The notes: a model not told the origin generated them from the letters alone. DNA of 64,000 bases from Macrostomum lignano (GCA_002269645.1 NIVC01000385.1:1-64000), one strand, 5' to 3'; shown: positions 10,065 through 51,085, counted from the stretch's first letter. Numbers and translations are program-made.

Positions 10065-12208
10065 GTCATCCGCTTTTCTTCGTTTGCTCCTTGATGCCAT
10101 GACGTATAATTACGTTTCCGTTTCGTCCAATAAAACTTTAAATAAACAAGTTAAACTTGAATTATCAAGAATTTCTAATAAAAAAATAGGATTAACAATA
10201 TTCGCACTCGGCCATCGCCCACAATGAGCGCCTAGCCAATCCAGCGAAAGGGCGGGCCAACCGCAAGCCGATCCCATTGGCTAATTTGCTGAGTGGCCAC
10301 CCCGATATTTGATACTATGACTGTCCTCTTAACTTCCAGCTGCTCTCCTACCTGAATTTTCCTGTGCAATCTTCGTGCGATGTGTGTGCTCTGTCAATCC
10401 AAAAAATCCCCAAAAAATGAAATTTTTTGTTTTCTTCGCAATTGATAGACAAGTGGTGAGATGATGAAAGAGGAGATTCTGCCTTCACATTTTAAAAATC
10501 TGAAAAAGCAGAAGTGGCTCGATAGGAGCCACTGTAAATTAAAATGGAAATGTGAAGTGTTGTACAACGAAAGTATTACGAAGCTCAGGTGTTCAGGTAT
10601 AAATGTAACAATATTTTATTGATTTTCAGAGATTTTTTTCAAAATGAAGTTGATGTCCAAGAAAATTCAAGAATTCAAGACAGTCTGGAAGACATTCTGG
10701 AGGCCAGCAGCTTCAGCTACACAAGGGAATTATCCGAATTAGAAGAAACGGCTAGCCAATGTACTAGAGAAAGTGCAGCAGCGTGTCTTCACCCGCGAAG
10801 ATTGGAGAAGGGCCCCAGCCGTTATCAAATAAGGGTAAGCTGTTAGTCCAAGTTAAATTGGTGGGTCAGTATGTGGGTGAGTCAGTGGATGAGTGGTTCA
10901 GTGAGTAAGTTAGTCTTCCACATCCTCCTACTTATAATGAGGCAACTGGATCAGCCTGAAACACGATTTCTTTCAAAGCGATCCGGAGTCTGAGGTTGAA
11001 TTTATTGCCACGACGAATTCGAAAGGCTCTGCATTGCCGCCACATCCACCGGTATTTGCTGCTGCTAGAAAGGAAAACGCAGAGACCCCAGCAGTGGTGG
11101 CGGCAGCGACAGAGACCCAAGCCTCTACAAAGCGGCCGAAGCGGCAGCGGCGGAAGCAGCAGCGGCCGAAGGGGCAGTGGCGGAAGCAGCACAGGCGGCG
11201 TCAGCGAAGGCGGTAGCAGCGAAGGCGGCAGCGGCAAAAGCGGAAGCAGCAATGGCAGCTGCAGAGACGTCAACCGTTCAAAAAAACTCGATTGAGCACT
11301 AGTGCTTATTTATGCTCGCACATCTGCTGCTGGGACAGACGATCGGCCAATCCGCTTGCAGTTCGGGCCGGGCCCAATCAAGAGGCTGCAGGAGCAGTTT
11401 CAGTCTATTTCCTCCATGTGTATCAGCTGCGAGAGCTGGTCCGAGGACACTGAAACTCGAAGAAAGCCAGCAGCAGAAAATCAACATACTGGCTGGAAGT
11501 CAGGCCCGTCTGGATCAGCGGGCAGGGCAATCAGCCAGCTTGCTGTTTGAACCACTAAATTCACTGGCGGAGATGCTCGCTTTCTTACTGAATTGCCTTC
11601 TGAGCGAGTTCTGCCTTTGGTAAGTTTCAGCGTTATTCCATTCTGATTTTAAAATCCACCTACTTGCTACTGCTTATGAGGAGTCAGTAGTAAAAGTAGT
11701 GTAGTTCCTATATTAATCAAAATTAAGCTGGAACCCAATTTACTGTCACTTCCGTCCGTTTAATGATTAATCACCCCACCCCGTCTTTACCAGCGCGGAG
11801 ATTGGGCAACTGCAGTCACCGACATGGTCAGTGTCATCCTGACGCCTCGAATGCAAGCATTGGTCAATTTCAAAGCGTGCGGAACAGGATGTGCCCAGTC
11901 TTGTTTAGCCACAGAGCTATCGGATCGGGAGCTTGCGTTTCAATCCAAGTTTTTGGGCTACATCCAAGGTATGATATTCTGCGATTAACCTAAATGCAGC
12001 TAACCCTTCTTACAATCTGAAATCCATAAAACAATAGTAAAGCCTACTTTACACTAATATAGTCTTTTTATACCACACTCTTGTATAGTTATCAACCTAT
12101 ATGCATGCCTTGTTGGAATTGCAGATGCCGTCCCAGCAATTTATGGCACCATGCAGAGCGGAGGACGGCAGACCGTCTCAGGATCTGGTCGCTAGCCAAG
12201 TGCGGCAG

Positions 12209-12500
12209 GCACGCGAAGGTGTATTCAGCACGCCAGTGAAGTATGAGACAGACCAGGCCTAAGGGCTACGGTCTGCGATGCTTCACGCCTGCCCCTATAT
12301 TCAGCAGGTCAAGGCTGGAGAGGGAGGTCTGCACCCGCTATTTGCCACTGGCAGCCGCAGACCCCCCCCCCCCTCACGCTGTTTCACAAGTCGACCCAGG
12401 GTACTCGTCCCCGCGTGTGTTCAAGGCAGACCCTAGGGCTGCTGGACAGACTGGGCTCCGACGCTGGCGACCCATCCAGTGGCTTCGGCCGAATTTGGGT
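12209..12500 (+). ncRNA. Candidate HDV-like self-cleaving ribozyme at the LINE 5' end
   Basis: P1 GCACGCG(12209-15)/CGCGUGU(12412-18) with G1-U wobble; P3 GGG(12399-401)/CCC(12409-11); 7-nt L3 UACUCGU; P1.1 AC(12403-04)/GU(12419-20); P2 ACCCA(12394-98)/UGGGU(12496-500); J4/2 CGAA with candidate catalytic C12490. Two extra U between CGAA and P2, and the P4 closure is not clean. Confidence 0.7.
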
Positions 12501-12682
12501 ATGCGGGTCTGGCTTGCCAGCCTGCAGGCCGTGGTACTGCTTAACGTACCCCCTAATGCCTAAGGTGTTTGACCGTGCCGATGGGCTGGAAGGCCGGGGG
12601 TTGTCCGGTCGCTAGCGGTCCTTTTCTTTTTCTTCTTTCCTCTTTCTTTTGTGACTCAGCTCACTCCTTCCCGCTTTCAGCT

Positions 12683-14148
12683 ATGGCGTCATCCGCCTCT
12701 TTAACCCCCGCTGAAGCCGGGGCCCCGGCAACTCCGGCCGGTGACTCTGGCACCAGCGCCGCCCCACCGGGGGCAGATGGGCTTGCCGCCGGCTCGGCTG
12801 GTGACATGCCCGCACGCGCAACCGGGCCCTCCGCTGAAGCCCGACGCACCCGCAACCAACGCCGCAACGAGCGGCGACGGCGACTACGGGGTACTGCGGG
12901 CCGGCCACCGGCGGAGGGGAACCTAGGGAGGGCGAGGCTGCTGTTGGGCCGAAAGGAACCACAGCAACCCCTGCCCCCCAGGATACAACCCCCGCTGGTG
13001 AGCCACCCAGTATACCTGCTACAAGCGCGGCCGGGCCTTCGGGAACCGCCGCCACCAACTACGCCTCAAAGGTCAAGCTCCAACCGGCGGTCATCGTCTT
13101 CGGGGAAGAGCAGGACCTCACGGCCGACGAGCTCGACAGTGCCTGGCGCACCATCGATGCTGCGCTCATCGACCAGCTCCTGGCGGGCCGCCCTGTGAGC
13201 GTGGTCAAGTCTGCCAAGACCGACGGCTGCATCTTCATCTGGTGCAGCTCGGAGGAGAGCAGCCGCAATCTACGCGAGCTTCTGCCAAAGCTGAACTGGC
13301 CCAAGAAGCTCGGCAAGCTCGTCTTCGCCAGCGAGGGCGAACGACAGAAGACCCAGCGCTTTCGCGTCTGGATCCCGGCCGGCAGTGCCATTAAGTCCGG
13401 AGATCAGCTTAGGCAAATATTGCTAAAGCTGCACCCCGACCTTAAGGTCAACGGGCTCCTACACCACGCCACTTCCCGCAAGGAGAAGGGGGCTACGGTG
13501 ATCCTAGGGCTCTCTGATGACTGGGCTAAGCGCTTGCCGCCTAAGTCCACAATTCATATTGGTCTGACTCAGCTGACCATCCTCCGTTGCGAGGAGCGGA
13601 AAGCTGATGAAGCCAAGAATGCCAAAGCTTCCGAAACCGGAACTGGGGCCCAGGCTCCTCCGGCAAAGAAGCCGAGGCAAACGGCCGATCCTATGCCCGG
13701 TAAGGCAGTTCGCGCTGCTGAAACCGGAAATCGCAATCGCAGACCCGCCAGGAGCACCCGGAGGTCCGGCCTGATCCAGCGCGCGCTGGACCAGGCCAAG
13801 AACCTTCGTGCGCATCGTGAGCGGGCCCGCGCTTCTCGCGCTCCACCCCAACAGCCAGAAGGCCAGACTCTAAGCGGGGAGGCTCCGACCGACTGGTTCG
13901 AGTCTGTGACTCACCAGGAGGCTGGCGCCACCCGCATCGACCTGACCGACGAGGCAGAGGGGACGGGCAGTGACAGCACCGAAGCACGCAGGAGAGGCGA
14001 CGGTAACGTCCACGCTGGGCTCACGTCCGCGGAGGACTCCACAGCCACCCTAACTGCTGAGGACGCTGAAACTCCCATGGAGGTCTGCGGGTCACCCACC
14101 ACTGAAAAGGAGGAGGATGACCTGCTCAACGATTCCCCAACTGCGTGA
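12683..14148 (+). CDS. LINE ORF1 (DUF4780-like gag protein), ~490 aa, one 1-bp frameshift at ~12899
   Basis: MASSASLTPA...RRTRNQRRNERRRRLRG continues, after adding one G in a G-run, into PATGGGEP...NYASKVK...QRFRVWIPAG...LLKLHPDLKVNG...ATVILGLSDDW, which resembles R1/LOA ORF1. Confidence 0.8.
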
Positions 14149-14150
14149 TA

Positions 14151-17100
14151 ATGATCAGCAACCAGGGAATCCATTGCCTGCAGATTAATCTGCAGCACTG
14201 CGTCGCAGCCTCGGTCAACCTTATGCGTTACGCCGAGCTCGACAAGCCGGGGCTCATCCTCGTCCAGGAACCCTGGACTCTCAGAGGTAAGCCTCAAAAC
14301 GCCCCTGCTGGCTACAATTGTTTTTATACTTACCCTCGCGAGGCCAACCAGCCTCCCAGAGCTTGCATCTTTGCGAGCAAAACGCTCAGTGCGTGGCTCA
14401 GATCGGACCTGTCCAACAGGGACATCTGCGTCATCCAATCCGAGGACCTTCTTCCTGGGAAGACCACCCTCATTGCCTCGGTTTACCTACCAGGCGATGC
14501 TGCGGTCGTCCCCAGAGCCCTCGCTACGCTGGTAGAGCTCTGCTCTGCCAAAAACTACGAGCTCATGGTTGCCGGCGACATCAACGCCCACCACACTCAC
14601 TGGGGCAGCACTGGCATTAATCAGAGAGGCGAAGACCTCCTAGCCTACGTTGCCTCTACGACCCTCGAGTTCTGCAACTCTGGGTCCACCCCTACCTTTG
14701 ACAACGGACGGTGGTCGGAGGTGATCGACGCTACGCTCGCAACGCCCAGACTCTACCAGAGTATTGGGGCGTGGCGGGTGCTTCCAGTGTCCTCACTATC
14801 GGATCACAAGTTCATCTCCTTCAACCTAATGGCCGCGCGTAGCGCAACTCGTGTTATGTGGAGACGGAACGCCAGAAATACGGATTGGGAAACCTTCGGG
14901 CTCGCCCTGAAGGAATTCCATCGGTCTCCTGGCCAACCATCCACGATCACGTCGTGCCGAGAGGCGGATGAGTGCGCGACTGTTTTGACAGAGACGCTAA
15001 CCGCCGCCTTTGAGGCGTCCTGCCCTTTAAAAGCCTATAAAGGGAAAAAATCGGCGCCGTGGTGGAATCCCGAGCTCGGCAACCTCCGTCGCAGGGCTAA
15101 GAGACTCCACCGCAGAGCAACTAAAACTAAGAGCCCTGCAGACCAAACCGCCTATCATGAAGCAATTCATGAGTTTAAAAGGCAGGTTAGGAATGCAAAG
15201 GCTCAAAAATGGCGACAATACTGTGAGGAGCTAGAGGGCTCACGCCCCACCTCCAGAGTTGTGAAAGCGCTCACGCTGGACAAAATGTCTAAGCTCTCCT
15301 CGGTCAAACGCACCGACGGTACGTCCACGGACAACCCAGGGGAAACGCTTGATGTAATGCTCACTGCGTTTTTCCCTAACGAGCCAGCTAACCAGACCAC
15401 TCCGGATCACTCGGAGGGAGGTCACGCGCTGGCTGCATCTATCATCACGGAGGACCGCATTGTGAGAGCGGCAAATTCCTTCAAGCCTTTCAAAGCCCCA
15501 GGACCCGACGGCATTGTACCGGCCCTTCTAAGAGAGGCGGTTAAATGCCCAGGCTTCCTGCGCAAACTTTGCAGCCTTCTTCGGGCATGCATCACGCTTG
15601 GTTATGTCCCGCAGGCATGGACCGAGGCAAAGGTGATCTTTATCCCTAAGCCAGGCCGCCCGGACTACCATTCTATCAAATCCTTCAGACCGATCAGCTT
15701 GACCTCCTCCCTGGTCAAGCTGATGGAGAGACTGGTGCTTTGGCGCCTTCTCTCTGTTGAGCTGAAGAACAAACCTCTCAGCGAGAACCAGCACGCTTTT
15801 CGGGCGGGTCGCTCCACTGAAAGCGCGCTGCACGTCCTGGTCGATAAACTCGAGAAGGCCGTGCTTGGTAGTGGCTTTGCTCTGGGGATCTTCCTGGACA
15901 TCATTGGCGCCTTCGATAACGTCCTCTTTGAGGCGTTCCGAAGAGCTCTTTGTGAGAGGCTAACGCACTCACATCTCACCAGATGGATCATGTACATGAT
16001 CAGCCATCGCACGGCCACCGCCAGTCTGCTGGGCTACCAGAGGACGGTCCCCGTCTGCAAAGGTAGCCCGCAAGGTGGGGTGCTGTCTCCAGTTCTCTGG
16101 AATATGGTCATCGATGAGCTCCTCCGGGATGTTCGGCCTGACCCCATTCTGAAAGTTGGATATGCGGACGATGTCACCGCGGTGGCATCTGGTCCGTCCC
16201 CTGATACCCTCAGGGACCTTCTTCAGAACTTCATCTACGCTGCTGAGCAATGGGCGGACCGCTGTGGTTTAAGGCTCTCTGAGACTAAGACCGCAGCGAT
16301 CATGTTCACCAGCAGGACCAAGTGGCAGATTCGGCCGCTCACGCTTTACGGAAGGGAAATCCCCTTCTGCAAGCAGACTAAATGTCTGGGTATTACCCTG
16401 GACCACAGGCTGAACTGGTCTCCCCACGTTCAAACAAAAGCCAAAAAGGCCTTCGCAGTCCTCGCGCAATTGCGCAGGGCCGTCGGCACCACCTGGGGGC
16501 TCACCCCCAAGCGCCTCTGGTGGATCTACACTGCAATGGTTAGGCCCGCTATCTCGTATGGCGGCCTGATCTGGGCTAGCGCCCTGCAGATAAAGACCTG
16601 TCTAGAGGCTCTCAGGAGAGCGCAAGGGCGCGCTTGTCGCACGATCATGAGCGCCCCTCCGTCTGCTCCTTACGATGGCCTCAACGCCTTCCTCAACATT
16701 CCTCCGCTGGACATCTTTGTCCGCAGGGAAGCGGCTAAGACTGCCCGCCGTCTAGCTGACGCTGGCATTCGAATCCAGCCCCATAGGGCCATGGCTAAGC
16801 GCAAGCTTCTGCCCCACGCTGACCTCTGCCTCAAGGACTTGAGAGACAGCGGCGGGCTCCACGTCCTATCTGACGGCGAACCCCGCACTCTCAACCTCTT
16901 TCAGCGCTACAAGGTCACCATCCCCTCTAGGGATGCTGCCAATGACCACTGGAATTTCCAGGAGGTCCATTGCTACACGGACGGATCCATCAAAGACGGT
17001 CGCGCCGGCTTTGGGGTCTGCATCATCATCAACGGCCGCGTAATTGCCACGCATGCCCAGCACACTGGTAGACTCTCCACAGTCTTCCAGAACGAAGTCC

Positions 17101-17854
17101 TTGCCATCAGCTCTTGCGCTGCAGAGCTAAACGCCAAGGTTACGAGAGGAAAGACTATTGTCATCCACTCCGACAGCCAAGCGGCCTTACAGGCCCTTTG
17201 CCACACCACAACGAACTCCCGGACAGTCGCCGACTGCGCCCGGCAGCTCAACCTCCTGGCCAGAAGCAATACTGTCAGGCTGAAGTGGATCCCAGGGCAC
17301 GCAGGGTTTCCGGGGAACGAGCTGGCAGACACCCTCGCCAAGAGGGGCGGCTCTGGCTCTTTTTTCGGCCCTGCCCCCTGGTCCCTATGCCCTTGACAGT
17401 CATCAATCGTCAGATCGACGACTGGGCTGACTCCCTCCACAGGGACAGATGGGCGGGCACCCAAAACTGCCGGCAATCTCGTGCCGCGGTTCCTTGCCCG
17501 TCTCACAGGCTCAGAAACATCCTTCTGAACCAGAATCGGAAGGATATTCGAGCCCTTGTCATGACCCTTACCGGCCATGGCTACCTCGCCAGGCACTGCT
17601 TCCTCCGAGGCGACCTCGAGAGCGAAATTTGCCCCTTTTGCGAGTGCGACAATGAAGATGCTCAGCACTTTGTCTGTCACTGCCCTTTCTTTAACAGAGA
17701 CCGGCTACGCTACCTCGGGCCGAACCCGTCCATTGACGAGGTTTGCCAGCCCGACAGCATCCCACGGCTCATCCAGTTCCTTCGGGCGACTAGACGAGCC
17801 AGTCTCTTCCCAACGGAAGATCACGCTGCAGGACGGACCGGCGGACCACCCTGA
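14151..17854 (+). CDS. LINE ORF2: AP endonuclease + reverse transcriptase + RNase H + CCHC finger, one 1-bp frameshift at 17374-17378
   Basis: APE motifs LQINLQH, LVQEP, GDINAHH, SDH; RT motifs KAPGPDG, FRPISL, QGGVLSP, YADD; RNase H motifs YTDGS, SDSQAA, WIPGH, GNELAD. One extra C in the C5 run joins the frame to ...TLTGHG...CPFCECDNEDAQHFVCHC. ATG lies 2 nt after the ORF1 stop. Confidence 0.95.
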
Positions 17855-19508
17855 CCGGCCCCACGCCTCTGCCTGTCTGCGGGCCTTCAGGGGCTAGCGG
17901 AATGGGCGACCCTCGCCTCCCCGCTGTGTCTACGGACCACCCTGCAGCTAAGTCAAGTAAGTCAAGTGCGGCAGTATTTGAGGCACGGAGCTGACCGGAT
18001 CTCGGGGCGGTCGCATCGCCGCAACACAATCGGTGCCATGACGCCTTCAAATTCAATTCGCGCAAGCGCAGTCGCGACTCCACAAGCCAGCGGGCTTTCG
18101 CAGGCCACCACATCTGCTACCGCAGCGGGTCCAAAAGCGGCCAGTTCCCACTCAGCAGCAGAAGGCAGCAAAGCGCCGCAGAGTGAGCAGGGCTGTTCGA
18201 GAGACTGATGATTTGATGGGGTCAAGTGACGATGAATTTGGGTGTCCTACCGAATACAGTGACTGACATGTCAAATCCTAGGCTAATTAAGATGCTTTTT
18301 GTAGGATTGTGATTTTAGAAGATTTGCTGTTTAGTTTTTGGGGAAATATGCATAGGTCCGGTGTTTCAAGTCGGTAAAATAGGGTGAGTTCTCACATCGC
18401 TTTTTGCTCCTCTATTTGCATAAAAACTTTTGATACAGCTAGCAACCGGACATACATCAGAGAGGACGTGTGTAACATATTGACCATTGTACCCTATAGC
18501 TATGTCTGAATCATTGACGATGTCGACACTTACATGTGACAATAACATCCAGCTTTGCATTGCAATCTAAGTTCATTGCAATTTGCGTGCCAATAATGTC
18601 AAGGAGATTTGTCGCCCCAAATTTTCAGTCCTGGTGAACGAATTTCTTTATTTTCAAGGCTTAGATTCAGCGGATCCGTACGACCTTTGCGATGCAAGCG
18701 ATAAGTATGAGTACTACGAAATTTTCTGTGGTGACGTCGTCCGCGGACATTAAGGACCAGCTGTCCTCGAAGTTGAGATTCGTTCTGTGCGGACCAGTTC
18801 AGCCCGCTGTGTCGCAGTGTCGGATAGGCGCCCTGTATTGCTGGTTCAGTTTATCACTACAAGTTACTGTATGATGATATATTGATTTGCATGCAAACAA
18901 TTATTAGTCATAGGTCTGCTGAAAAATGTCTACTGCCGAGCAGAAGATTGACCCTCATGAAGGAGCGAAAGCTCCATGCTGTCATGGCAGTTGGATAAGC
19001 GACAGTGTCGTGAAACAGTTTGGAGTTAATAGCATTCGTCATGCAAAGCAAGAAACTTATTACGGTGGACCATCTGCGACTTGGAGAACGTGACAGAAGC
19101 CGTTACGAGTGATTCATAGAAGCGTAAGGTAGTCAGAGCTTGTTCTCAGGCACTTAACTGGGCGCTCCGATTGCCATTATGCTGGAACATTGCCTTGGGC
19201 GAATCCGTTCTAGAAGACATTAACGGACCTATCCAAAATCAGCCTGAAATCCCAGTCGTTGTCGCGATTCTTGCGTTCTCTGAATTCCTTCGACGAGGCT
19301 GCACGAACCCCTAAACATTTAAGCTCTCAAAACCGACTATTGAATTTCTCATTCTCTAAAATATGATACTGACTGTCGTGTGTTTTAAACCGGTTTCGAT
19401 ACGGGAACGTTAACCTACTACAATTTCTAAAACGCTTAAAGGCGCAATTTATATGCCCAAATGAGAGTATAGTCGATATCTTAAAAAATTTACAAGTGAA
19501 TATAGATA

Positions 19509-20802: not shown

Positions 20803-21435
<633 letters not shown>

Positions 21436-21875
21436 GGGCGCCTCCAATCTCAGGCACGGACGCGGTACATGTAAAAAGGACAAACAAGTCAAGTTGATTT
21501 AAGTTGCCGATATTTCGAATTAGGTAAATTCTTCGTCAGGGCAAGTGAAAAGTAGCGACAAGTGGTGTTGTAAAAGTTATTAAATAGGCGGGTTAGAGGG
21601 GAGAGAGAGTAGACAGGTAGATAGAGAGCGTACGGTATGTACACTTGGTGTGAGTCGATAAAACACTATTAGAGTTGAAAATGCAAAATAAAAAACAGTG
21701 CACAAATAAAGTGAACCGCACGTGGGCTGCAGCGATCCTACACACGAAATAAATTATGGAATGGTGCGACTGCACCGGTGTCTAAAAAGGGTGTCTAAAA
21801 AGAAAGAGTGACTCTAAGCACTTTACAAAATGGACCTCAATAAATAAAAAAGGTGAACAGGCCCTCAAAAACTAA

Positions 21876-21895
21876 AGAGAAGAGAAGAGATAAGA

Positions 21896-21983
<88 letters not shown>

Positions 21984-22061
21984 GGATCAGAGAGAAATGA
22001 GAAAAGAAAAGAGGAGAGGAGAGAGACAAAGGGAGGGGAGAAGAGAGATAGGAGAGAAGAG

Positions 22062-22137
<76 letters not shown>

Positions 22138-22340
22138 GGATCAGAGAGAAATGAGAAAAGAAAAGAGGAGAGGAGAGAAAAGAAGAGAGAAGAAGAGATG
22201 AGATAAGAGAGATGGAAGAGAAGAAAGATGAGGGAAGGTACGAGAGAAGAAGAGAGGAGAGAGGAGAGAAAGGAGAAAAGTTGAGAGGAGAGGAGAGACG
22301 AGGGACGAGAGAAAAAGAGGAAACAGAAGGGAAGATAGAA
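21876..22340. repeat. Purine-rich compound (GA)n block 2
   Basis: Same spacers as block 1 (GGATCAGAGAGAAATGAGAAAAGAAAAGAGGAGAGGA) with different (GA)n lengths. Confidence 0.95.
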
Positions 22341-49777: not shown

Positions 49778-51085
49778 TCAAGCCTTGACATCTAAGCATT
49801 CCCTCCAAGCCTTGACATCTTAGCAATTCCCCCCAAGAGTTGACATCTCAGCACTTCCCCCCAAGCCTTGAAATCGCAGCAATTATACCGAAGCCCTTAC
49901 ATCTCAGCAATTCCCCCCAAGCCTTGACATCGCAGCAATCACCCAAGCCTTGACATCTATAAGCATTCCCTCCAAGCCTTGACATCTTAGCAATTCCCCC
50001 CAAGAGTTGACATCTCAGCACTTCCCCCCAAGCCTTGAAATCGCAGCAATCCCCCCAAGCCTTGACATCTCAGCACTTCCCCCAAGCCTTGACATCTTAG
50101 CAATTCCCCCCAAGCCTTGACATCTTAGCAATTCCCCCAAGAGTTGACATCTTAGCAATTCCCCCCAAGCCTTGACATCTTAGCAATTCCCCCCAAGCCT
50201 TGACATCTTAGCAATTCCCCCCAAGAGCTGACATCTCAGCACTTCCCCCCAAGCCTTTACATCTTAGCAATCCCCCCAAGCCTTGACATCTTAGCAATTC
50301 CCCCAAGAGTTGACATCTTAGCAATTCCCCCAAGAGTTGACATCTTAGCAATTCCCCCCAAGCCTTGACATCTCAGCAATTCCCCCTAAGCCTTGAAATT
50401 GCAGCAATCCCCCCACCCCCAAGCCTTGACATCTTAGCAATTCCCCCCCAAGCCTTGACATCTTAGCAATTCCCCCCAAGCCTTGACATCTTAGCAATTC
50501 CCCCCAAGAGCTGACATCTCAGCACTTCCCCCCAAGCCTTTACATCTTAGCAATCCCCCCAAGCCTTGACATCTTAGCAATTCCCCCCAAGAGTTGACAT
50601 CTCAGCAATTCCCCCCAAGAGTTGACATCTCAGCACTTCCCCCCAAGCCTTGAAATCGCAGCAATCCTCCCAAGCCTTGACATCTCAGCACTTCCGCCAA
50701 GCCTTGACATCTTAGCAATTCCCCCAAGCCTTGACATCTTAGCAATTCCCCCAAGAGTTGACATCTTAGCAATTCCCCCCAAGCCTTGACATCTCAGCAA
50801 TTCCCCCTAAGCCTTGAAATTGCAGCAATCCCCCCACCCCCAAGCCTTGACATCTTAGCAATTCCCCCCAAGCCTTGACATCTTAGCAATTCCCCCCAAG
50901 CCTTGACATCTTAGCAATTCCCCCCAAGAGTTGACATCTCAGCACTTCCCCCCAAGCCTTTACATCTTAGCAATCCCCCCAAGCCTTGACATCTTAGCAA
51001 TTCCCCCAAGAGTTGACATCTCAGCAATTCCCATTAGCCTTGAAATATCAGTAATTCCCCCCAAGCCTTTCTAGAAATCTTAGCA
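49778..51085. repeat. ~26-28-bp minisatellite (AAGCCTTGACATCTTAGCAATTCCCCCC)n, roughly 45-50 copies, with higher-order structure
   Basis: Variable C-run; diagnostic variants recur at ~420-bp spacing (TTGAAATTGCAG at ~50393 and ~50814; CCTTTACATC at ~50537 and ~50957). Confidence 0.97.

What the first reader, a model, noticed from the sequence alone, without database searches (positions are those of the whole stretch)
12209..12500. HDV-like ribozyme fold starts at the first nucleotide of the LINE
Seen: the base right after the TSD begins GCACGCG, which pairs perfectly (G1-U wobble) with CGCGUGU about 200 nt downstream. That strand is preceded by GGG-UACUCGU-CCC (P3/7-nt L3/P3') and followed by GU. 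The usual CC/GG P1.1 is replaced by a compensatory AC/GU pair. UCAA follows (GCAA in HDV), and CGAA..UGGGU lies ~70 nt later, pairing with ACCCA. The ~180-nt J1/2 folds into nested hairpins. Established: HDV-like ribozymes define the 5' ends of R2 and several other non-LTR elements. Inference: this flatworm-type LOA/R1 element cuts itself out of read-through host transcripts. Caveats: P2 is 2 nt out of register, which could reflect homopolymer deletions like those in both ORFs, and P4 closure is imperfect.
Basis: partly seen in the sequence, partly recalled or inferred. Interest (0 to 1): 0.85.

Follow-up and report, generated by a model that had tools for sequence, protein, structure and literature searches.

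The report
Self-cleaving ribozyme fold heading flatworm LINE

Summary
The core observation holds. A 5,754-bp LINE (12209-17962; APE-RT-RNase H) is flanked by a perfect 12-bp target-site duplication. Its first 7 nt pair with 12412-12418, directly after a 3-bp/7-nt-loop hairpin (GGG-UACUCGU-CCC), and are followed by a 2-bp P1.1.

- **Related elements:** two diverged elements from other samples carry the same architecture. L001 has 62% ORF2 and 34% ORF1 identity. L088 has 60% ORF1 identity. The helices show compensatory changes and almost no broken pairs. The L001 contig starts at the position homologous to 12209.
- **Chance level:** a strict descriptor hit only these 5' ends plus one chance site in 1.06 Mb.
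the 3' half. The CGAA...UGGGU at 12490-12500 belongs to a conserved local hairpin, where it pairs with ACCCA 12470-74, and it cannot form P2 in L001. The conserved P2 3' strand is 12452-12462. P4 is the hairpin 12421-12446, and J4/2 is 12447-12451, so the best catalytic-C candidate is C12447, not C12490.
- **Weak points:** J4/2 is non-canonical in two of three sequences, Rfam models do not hit, and cleavage is untested.

Verdict: probably a genuine large HDV-like ribozyme, a new member of a known kind. Interest is moderate.

The parts
12197..12208 (+). 5' copy of the target-site duplication CAAGTGCGGCAG
   Evidence: Exact 12-mer occurs only here and at 17963-17974.
12209..17962 (+). Non-LTR retrotransposon (LINE), 5,754 bp. 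5' UTR 12209-12682; ORF1 12683-14148 (frame change near 13195); ORF2 14145-17854 (frame change between 17114 and 17396). Protein-dead copy.
   Evidence: ORF list. Pfam Exo_endo_phos, RVT_1 and RNase_H in ORF2. Closest named proteins are from Macrostomum lignano, up to 99% identity.
12209..12215 (+). P1 5' strand GCACGCG. The predicted cleavage site is the 12208/12209 phosphodiester.
   Evidence: 7 bp with 12412-12418. First base after the TSD. The L001 contig starts at the homologous base: both have 32 nt from nt 1 to the conserved GUAUGAGA.
12216..12389 (+). J1/2 peripheral domain (174 nt): a closed multibranch fold joined to P1 by AAG and to P2 by AA
   Evidence: MFE -70.9 kcal/mol, z = -3.5. 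Same architecture in L001, with 6 compensatory pairs and none broken in the consensus.
12390..12398 (+). P2 5' strand: outer GUCG 12390-93, bulged A12394, inner CCCA 12395-98
   Evidence: Pairs verified. Conserved with compensatory changes in L001 and L088.
12399..12411 (+). P3 (GGG/CCC) with the 7-nt L3 UACUCGU
   Evidence: [quoted passage not shown]
12412..12418 (+). P1 3' strand CGCGUGU
12419..12420 (+). P1.1 3' nucleotides GU, pairing with C12404 and A12403 of L3
   Evidence: Both pairs change on both sides in L001 (U-A, C-G).
12421..12446 (+). J1.1/4 (UCAA) and the P4 hairpin
   Evidence: RNAfold of 12421-12451. A hairpin sits at the same place in L088 (GGCAGACC/GGUCUGCC). L001 has an unrelated 10-11-bp hairpin sequence there.
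12447..12451 (+). J4/2 CAGAC. C12447 is the best candidate for the catalytic cytosine.
   Evidence: It is the only C that aligns across the three J4/2 strands: GGA-C-AGAC, AG-C-UGC, GAA-C-GUG. This assignment is inferred, not shown.
12452..12462 (+). P2 3' strand: inner UGGG 12452-55, 3-nt loop CUC 12456-58, outer CGAC 12459-62
   Evidence: Predicted by RNAfold once P1'/P1.1 are masked.
12463..12509 (+). Conserved stem-loop just 3' of the ribozyme (ACCCA 12470-74 / UGGGU 12496-500, capped by a cUUCGg hairpin).
   Evidence: Consensus fold of the three homologues.
17963..17974 (+). 3' copy of the target-site duplication

Best explanation
The 5' terminal ~254 nt of this Macrostomum lignano LINE (12209-12462) encode a large HDV-like (nested double-pseudoknot) self-cleaving ribozyme.

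- **Shown:** the helices, their covariation, and their position at the exact 5' end of the element.
- **Inferred mechanism:** when an active copy is transcribed from any upstream promoter, the RNA folds into P1 (nt 1-7 with 204-210) and a structured 174-nt J1/2 domain that brings P1 and P2 together. It also forms a bipartite P2 (4 + 4 bp here; 6 + 4 bp in relatives), P3/L3, a 2-bp P1.1 and a P4 hairpin. A cytosine in J4/2 (most likely C12447) then catalyses scission of the bond 5' of G12209.
- **Inferred consequence:** cleavage removes host sequence and leaves a 5'-OH element RNA that begins at nt 1, so full-length daughter copies start at exactly this base.
- **This copy:** it has broken ORFs, so here the fold is a relic of its parent. 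Its ribozyme sequence looks intact.
For: 1. **Position:** a perfect 12-bp TSD makes 12209 the first base. The L001 contig (62% ORF2 identity) begins at the homologous base, with the same 32-nt offset to a conserved motif, while its 3' end runs into unique flank.
2. **Pairing:** all pairs of P1, P2, P3 and P1.1 are standard in the window and in L001.
3. **Covariation in P1:** in homologous register, window versus L001 shows 2 compensatory pairs, one G-U to G-C change and none broken.
4. **Covariation in P2/P3/P1.1:** across three sequences, 97.6% of cells are paired against 33-52% when partners are slid. Five pairs change on both sides.
5. **P4:** a hairpin of unrelated sequence occupies the same place in L001.
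6. **L3:** U-N-N-N-C-G-U in all three, as in the validated drz-Agam-2-1. The R2 literature names a conserved C and G in L3.
7. **Chance level:** anchored descriptor p of about 6.5e-4 and 1.3e-3. The strict descriptor gave 2 true hits and 1 chance hit in 1.06 Mb.
8. **Overall architecture:** P1, a 3-4-nt A-rich linker, a closed J1/2 domain, an AA linker, then an extended and interrupted P2. drz-Agam-2-1 has the same layout, and there these features accelerate cleavage. Silkmoth R2 ribozymes have J1/2 loops of 216-498 nt.
9. **Selection on the RNA:** the structure is conserved although ORF1 is only 34% identical between the window and L001.
Against: - No Rfam HDV-family model matches, at gathering score or at E <= 10. 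A 174-nt insertion inside P1 may explain this, but it is still a failed test.
- J4/2 does not keep the canonical C-N-R-A. The window has CAGA(C), L001 has C-U-G-C and L088 has C-G-U-G, so the adenosines expected after the C are missing in two of three sequences. The catalytic C is therefore only a guess.
- The window's inner P2 is only 4 bp.
- Only three homologues exist, and the P1 5' strand is present in only two. The L088 contig starts inside J1/2.
- P1-like strands recur inside J1/2, so other pairings are possible.
- There are no RNA-end or cleavage data.
Confidence: 0.72

Rival explanations
1. One reading: P2 is ACCCA 12394-98 with UGGGU 12496-500, P4 spans 12421-12489, and C12490 (CGAA) is the catalytic base.
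For: The 5-bp P2 pairing exists, and a textbook C-G-A-A sits just before it, preceded by a cUUCGg-capped hairpin. L088 could form the same P2. The strict descriptor picks this P2 in the window because it asks for 5 contiguous pairs.
Against: - L001, which has intact ORFs, has no complement to its P2 5' strand (CUCAGA) at the homologous place (GGCUAAAC-CGGGU).
- In all three sequences that (U/C)GGGU pairs with a local ACCC(A) in a conserved stem-loop.
- The fold needs 2 extra nt in J4/2 in the window and a 2-nt gap between P2 and P3 in L088.
- C12490 is paired inside the GGC-UUCG-GCC hairpin.
- The alternative P2' at 12452-62 fits all three sequences and covaries.
Confidence: 0.08
2. A conserved, pseudoknotted 5' UTR structure that does not cleave, for example part of an internal promoter, an IRES-like element, or a binding site for the element's own proteins. 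The 5' end would then be set by transcription initiation at nt 1.
For: Covariation proves selection on structure, not catalysis. J4/2 lacks the canonical adenosines in two of three sequences. No Rfam hit. The first J1/2 hairpin is conserved at sequence level (88% over 41 nt), which hints at a job beyond spacing. L1Tc shows that promoter and ribozyme can share one 5' segment.
Against: The full set of HDV-specific features is hard to explain by any other known function: P1 starting at nt 1, a 3-bp P3 with a 7-nt U-N-N-N-C-G-U loop, P1' abutting P3', a 2-bp P1.1 to L3 positions 2-3, and P4 followed by a C-containing joiner into P2'.
Confidence: 0.15
3. The productive P1 uses one of the internal P1-like strands (window GCACGC 12228-33 or CACGC about 12377-81; L001 CCUGC about 143-147; L088 GCUCGC 76-81). 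Cleavage would then be internal, not at nt 1.
For: These strands can pair with P1' over 5-6 bp. One lies just 5' of P2 in all three sequences.
Against: The terminal strand gives the longest helix: 7 bp in the window and 6 bp in L001. Internal cleavage would delete the conserved J1/2 from the transposition template, yet the TSD-flanked copy and the L001 contig both keep it and start at the same base. A 5-mer match in 170 GC-rich nt is expected by chance about half the time (my own estimate).
Confidence: 0.03
4. Chance resemblance in a GC-rich 5' UTR.
Against: Anchored and strict descriptors are rare by chance. The fold recurs with compensatory changes in two independent relatives.
Confidence: 0.02

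Closest known systems
drz-Agam-2-1 and other large HDV-like ribozymes with a structured J1/2 domain (Anopheles gambiae; Webb et al. 2016, PMC4908430)
   Same: 7-bp P1, then a short A-rich linker, a closed J1/2 (P1.2) domain and an AA linker leading into an extended, interrupted P2. 3-bp P3 with 7-nt L3 U-N-N-N-C-G-U. 2-nt P1.1. A-rich J1.1/4. P4 hairpin.
   Different: J1/2 here is a 158-174-nt multibranch domain, not a single hairpin. J4/2 is CAGAC / GCUGC / GAACGUG instead of C-U-A-A. No sequence homology. The host is a flatworm. Activity is untested.
R2 retrotransposon 5' ribozymes (Drosophila, silkmoths, many animals including a planarian; Eickbush et al. 2013, PMC3774820)
   Same: An HDV-like ribozyme at the 5' end of a non-LTR element that frees it from a co-transcript. 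P1 6-7 bp, P2 >= 5 bp with tolerated mismatches, variable P4, J1/2 of up to 216-498 nt, conserved C and G in L3.
   Different: R2 is site-specific for 28S rDNA, has a single ORF with a restriction-like endonuclease, and often cleaves upstream in the 28S sequence (-28). This element has two ORFs (APE-RT-RNase H), inserts at a non-rDNA site, and puts P1 at its own first base.
L1TcRz of Trypanosoma cruzi L1Tc/ingi-clade elements (PMC3185411, PMC3383444, PMC4035085)
   Same: An APE-RT-RNase H type LINE whose first nucleotides form an HDV-like ribozyme cleaving immediately upstream of +1. It defines the element's 5' end and leaves a 5'-OH.
   Different: L1TcRz is compact (77 nt) and doubles as the internal promoter Pr77. 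Here the ribozyme spans about 254 nt, and promoter activity is unknown.
Other non-LTR elements whose HDV-like ribozyme cleaves at the 5' junction (R4, Dong, Baggins, as named in PMC3774820)
   Same: Cleavage at the element's own 5' end.
   Different: I could not obtain their sequences or place this element's RT in a tree, so the relationship is unknown.
Twister-variant ribozymes in Schistosoma mansoni non-LTR retrotransposons (PMC8501958)
   Same: Flatworm LINEs that use a self-cleaving ribozyme in their life cycle.
   Different: A different ribozyme class (twister rather than HDV-like) and a different flatworm lineage.

Membership tests
HDV-like self-cleaving ribozymes | Nested double-pseudoknot strand order P1-J1/2-P2-P3-L3-P3'-P1'-P1.1-P4-J4/2-P2' | tested here: met
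   All helices are present in this order in the window and L001, and the core from P2 onward in L088.
HDV-like self-cleaving ribozymes | P1 of 6-7 bp whose first nucleotide follows the scissile bond | tested here: met
   7 bp in the window (G-U at position 1) and 6 bp in L001, with 2 compensatory pairs and none broken. The cleavage site itself is inferred.
HDV-like self-cleaving ribozymes | 3-bp P3 closed by a ~7-nt L3 carrying the conserved C and G | tested here: met
   GGG/CCC with UACUCGU, UCUCCGU and UUCUCGU. Same U-N-N-N-C-G-U as drz-Agam-2-1. The conserved L3 C and G are reported for R2.
HDV-like self-cleaving ribozymes | P1.1: the two nt after P1' pair with L3 positions 3 and 2 | tested here: met
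   Window C-G and A-U. L001 U-A and C-G, both compensatory. L088 C-G plus a U-U mismatch.
HDV-like self-cleaving ribozymes | P2 of at least ~5 bp abutting P3 | tested here: met
   L001 and L088 have 6 bp, a 1x3 loop and 4 bp. The window has 4 bp, a 1x3 loop and 4 bp. Three pairs are compensatory. The R2 literature tolerates mismatches in P2.
HDV-like self-cleaving ribozymes | Catalytic C at the start of J4/2, followed by N-R-A with a constrained A | tested here: inconclusive
   One C aligns in all three J4/2 strands, but the following nucleotides are AGAC, UGC and GUG. Only the window fits C-N-R-A.
HDV-like self-cleaving ribozymes | Match to a curated covariance model of the family (Rfam) | tested here: not met
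   No hit at gathering score in the window or 20 related loci, and none at E <= 10 on 12150-12650. The 158-174-nt J1/2 inside P1 is a likely cause, but I could not test a J1/2-deleted construct.
HDV-like self-cleaving ribozymes | Mg2+-dependent self-scission giving 2',3'-cyclic phosphate and 5'-OH ends | not testable with these tools
   Needs transcription and cleavage assays.
5'-terminal ribozymes of non-LTR retrotransposons | Ribozyme +1 coincides with the first base of the element | tested here: met
   The TSD places the 5' end at 12209. The L001 contig starts at the homologous base.
5'-terminal ribozymes of non-LTR retrotransposons | The host element is a non-LTR retrotransposon, and the fold is conserved among its relatives | tested here: met
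   APE, RT and RNase H domains. Fold conserved in L001 and L088. Not found in relatives with 27-41% ORF2 identity.
5'-terminal ribozymes of non-LTR retrotransposons | Element RNA is made as a co-transcript with upstream host sequence | not tested
   No expression data. The flanks show no recognisable gene.
   No reference LINE set was available. APE-RT-RNase H order is shared by several clades. ORF1 of more distant relatives carries DUF4780.

The most novel reading that the evidence does not exclude
This is the first-seen lineage of large HDV-like ribozymes in free-living flatworm LINEs, and it has a non-canonical active-site joiner: a C that lacks the two adenosines normally following it. Its 160-175-nt J1/2 domain is conserved between elements whose ORF1 proteins are only 34% identical. 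That domain may have a second function, such as an internal promoter, an IRES or protein-binding site, or a folding switch that uses the P1-mimic strands found just 5' of P2.
Probability: 0.25. Interest if true: 0.55.

Novelty: new member of a known kind. Interest (0 to 1): 0.4.

Why it matters
HDV-like ribozymes are an established way for promoter-less LINEs to free themselves from host transcripts. This would extend that strategy to a two-ORF, RNase H-bearing LINE family of Macrostomum, a regeneration and germline model. I found no paper linking Macrostomum to such ribozymes.

- **Genome annotation:** it gives a precise rule for the 5' end of this repeat family.
- **Ribozyme research:** it offers a natural large-J1/2 variant with an unusual J4/2, which could test how strictly the active-site adenosines are needed.
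- **Limits:** it does not open a new class of mechanism.

Tried and rejected
- **Rfam scans:** no HDV-family match in the window, the 5' UTR or 20 related loci. The only sub-threshold hits were meaningless miRNA-like matches to the G/C-run hairpin on the minus strand.
- **Loose unanchored descriptor:** too many chance hits to be evidence. I replaced it with anchored and strict versions.
- **More homologues:**
  - The ORF2 search gave mostly relatives below 50% identity.
  - Contigs of P0002, P0007, P0012, P0013, P0016, P0038 and P0075 either lack the 5' UTR or have unrelated ones.
  - The L001 ORF1 search gave nothing new.
  - The window ORF1 search gave L088.
  - DNA-pattern scans of metagenome, genome and viral collections found nothing.
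  - 80 metagenome loci with 27-41% ORF2 identity have no such fold, by strict descriptor and by a covariance model of the core.
  - There is no second copy in the window.
rejected as the conserved fold (see rivals).
- **My own first P1 count:** it gave 5 compensatory pairs but used a shifted, non-homologous register. In homologous register the count is 2 compensatory plus 1 wobble-to-Watson-Crick change.
- **Host-gene context:** ORFs across the joined empty site look like nothing recognisable.
- **Viral yardstick:** I did not compare with the viral HDV ribozyme letters. I used a mosquito ribozyme from a paper supplement instead.

Full report
**What is at the locus**

The window carries one LINE. 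A perfect 12-bp direct repeat, CAAGTGCGGCAG, occurs only at 12197-12208 and 17963-17974, so the element is 12209-17962.
- ORF2 has endonuclease, reverse-transcriptase and RNase H domains.
- ORF1 and ORF2 each change frame once, so this copy is dead as a coding unit.
- The closest named proteins are Macrostomum lignano gene models, up to 99% identical. The host is therefore that flatworm or a very close relative.
- No second copy or fragment of the 5' UTR exists in the window.

**Checking the observation**

A script confirmed the following:
- G12209-G12215 pair with C12412-U12418: 7 bp, with a G-U wobble at position 1.
- GGG 12399-401 pairs with CCC 12409-11 around the 7-nt loop UACUCGU.
- G12419 and U12420 pair with C12404 and A12403.

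Significance depends on how the question is asked.
- With P1 anchored at the first base, which the TSD justifies in advance, only 13 of 20,000 dinucleotide shuffles of the 5' UTR matched.
- A strict descriptor required a 3-bp Watson-Crick P3, L3 = U-N-N-N-C-G-Y, P1 >= 6 bp, P1.1 and P2 >= 5 bp. Over 1.06 Mb (the window plus 87 related loci, both strands) it found three sites: this one, the 5' end of L001, and one chance site.

**Relatives**

The ORF2 search found few close relatives. Two carry usable 5' regions.

L001 is a 6,492-nt Logan contig.
- It has intact ORF1 and ORF2. ORF2 is 62% identical and ORF1 only 34% identical to the window.
- Its 3' end runs about 540 nt into unique flank past a 3' terminus like the window's.
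- Its 5' end stops at GCCUGC. Both sequences have exactly 32 nt between their first base and the conserved GUAUGAGA. The contig therefore begins at the base homologous to 12209, as expected if many copies share that 5' end.

L088 is a JGI metagenome contig found through ORF1, at 60% identity.
- It begins inside J1/2, so it lacks the P1 5' strand.
- It has the whole core from P2 onward.

More distant relatives (27-47% ORF2 identity, about 85 loci) have unrelated 5' UTRs or none. They show no such fold by descriptor, by Rfam, or by a covariance model built from the three cores.

**The conserved fold**

| Element | Window | L001 | L088 |
|---|---|---|---|
| P1 | 12209-15 / 12412-18 (7 bp) | 1-6 / 189-194 (6 bp) | 5' strand missing; P1' CGCGAGC 108-114 |
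| P2 outer | GUCG 12390-93 / CGAC 12459-62 | GCCG 165-168 / CGGC 241-244 | GCCG 84-87 / CGGC 156-159 |
| P2 internal loop | A / CUC (1x3) | C / CAA (1x3) | A / CAA (1x3) |
| P2 inner | CCCA 12395-98 / UGGG 12452-55 | CUCAGA 170-175 / UCUGAG 232-237 | CCCAAA 89-94 / UUUGGG 147-152 |
| P3 | GGG / CCC | GGG 176-178 / CCC 186-188 | GGG 95-97 / CCC 105-107 |
| L3 | UACUCGU | UCUCCGU | UUCUCGU |
| P1.1 | C-G, A-U | U181-A195, C180-G196 | C-G plus U-U mismatch |
| P4 | hairpin 12421-46 | 10-11-bp hairpin, unrelated sequence | hairpin 121-139 |
| J4/2 | GGA-C-AGAC | AG-C-UGC | GAA-C-GUG |

Covariation:
- In homologous register, P1 differs between the window and L001 by two compensatory pairs (A-U to C-G, C-G to U-A) and one G-U to G-C change. 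No pair is broken.
- On the three-sequence alignment, the 15 pairs of P2, P3 and P1.1 are 97.6% paired, against 33-52% when partners are slid by 1-3 columns. Five pairs change on both sides. The only unpaired cell is the U-U in L088's P1.1.
- RNAfold recovers the bipartite P2 in both the window and L001 once P1' and P1.1 are masked.

**J1/2**

J1/2 is 174 nt in the window and 158 nt in L001.
- It folds into a closed multibranch domain: -70.9 kcal/mol, z = -3.5 in the window.
- The consensus structure has 33 pairs. 24 are unchanged, 3 change on one side, 6 are compensatory and none is broken.
- It joins P1 through AAG or AAUG and joins P2 through AA.

[quoted passage not shown] In that ribozyme a stable J1/2 domain with short linkers and a long P2 speeds cleavage by orders of magnitude. 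Silkmoth R2 ribozymes have J1/2 loops of 216-498 nt. The size is therefore not an obstacle.

- In L001 the homologous stretch (GGCUAAAC-CGGGU) has no complement in the P2 5' strand.
- In all three sequences this (U/C)GGGU pairs with a nearby ACCC(A) (window 12470-74). Together they form a conserved stem-loop just 3' of the ribozyme, capped in the window and L088 by a cUUCGg hairpin that also sequesters C12490.
P2 now abuts P3 in register, and P4 is a properly closed hairpin.

**Weak points**

- The joiner J4/2 is the main one. One C can be aligned across the three sequences, so C12447 is my best candidate. Only the window then reads C-N-R-A. The relatives lack the adenosines that normally follow the C (drz-Agam-2-1 has C-U-A-A; the R2 literature speaks of a catalytic C and a constrained A).
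- Rfam models do not hit. I could not submit a J1/2-deleted construct to them.
- Only two sequences show the P1 5' strand.
- P1-like strands recur inside J1/2 (window 12228-33 and about 12377-81; L001 about 143-147; L088 76-81). They could form alternative pairings, possibly a folding switch. Individually such 5-mers are expected by chance, and cleavage there would delete a domain that daughter copies clearly keep.
- Nothing here shows RNA cleavage, host co-transcription or the clade of the element.

**Comparison with known systems, and verdict**

HDV-like ribozymes at LINE 5' ends are established.
- They are known for R2, R4/Dong, Baggins and L1Tc, where they release the element from co-transcripts and define +1.
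- A planarian R2 is among the predicted cases.
- Schistosoma LINEs use twister variants instead.
- I found no paper tying Macrostomum to such a ribozyme.

The locus meets the topological and sequence criteria of the family, with two exceptions: the J4/2 motif is inconclusive and the Rfam match is not met.

My assessment is a probable genuine large HDV-like ribozyme (0.72), a new member of a known kind, of moderate interest. The practical corrections are the ribozyme's 3' boundary (12462, not 12500) and the residue to mutate (C12447 first, with C12442, C12451 and C12490 as controls).

Noticed in passing
window 12463-12570: Between the ribozyme and the ORF1 start (ATG 12683) lie further stem-loops conserved in L001 and L088. 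One is ACCCA/UGGGU with a cUUCGg cap. Another is a GGCUUGCC-type hairpin. They may be a structured leader for cap-independent translation or protein binding.
   Followed up: partly
window 12228-12233 and about 12377-12381; L001 about 143-147; L088 76-81: Short copies of the P1 5' strand lie inside J1/2. One sits just 5' of P2 in all three elements. Conversely, the 5' strand of the J1/2 closing stem can pair with the terminal P1 strand (local hairpins GCAC/GUGU in the window, CCUGC/GCAGG in L001). This could be an alternative-conformer switch, or chance.
   Followed up: partly
window 12365-12376: A run of 12 C in J1/2 pairs with a G-rich strand (GGAGAGGGAGG). L001 has only 6 C here. The run's length may be unreliable in the assembly. 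It also produced spurious miRNA-like sub-threshold Rfam hits on the minus strand.
   Followed up: no
window about 13195 and 17114-17396: One frame change in ORF1 and one in ORF2 make this LINE copy non-coding. The relative L001 has both ORFs intact (525 and 1,232 aa).
   Followed up: partly
window 17860-17962; L001 5860-5957: The 3' UTR is conserved between the two elements (GG..UAGCGGAAUGGGCG ... CCCUGCAGCUAAGUCAA). It ends in short AAGT(C)-type repeats rather than poly(A). This is likely the RT recognition region.
   Followed up: no
window 20814-22312: Long impure (GA)n / AG-rich microsatellite arrays. They explain the strong GC and AT skew at 20-22 kb.
   Followed up: yes
window 49779-51069: A minisatellite with a 28-bp unit (CAAGCCTTGACATCTTAGCAATTCCCCC), about 46 copies at 84% match. 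It explains the negative GC skew at 50-52 kb.
   Followed up: yes
L002, L003, L005 (ORF1 genes): ORF1 of the more distant relatives (31-38% ORF2 identity) carries Pfam DUF4780. The window's ORF1 gave no Pfam hit, and none is on record for L001's.
   Followed up: no
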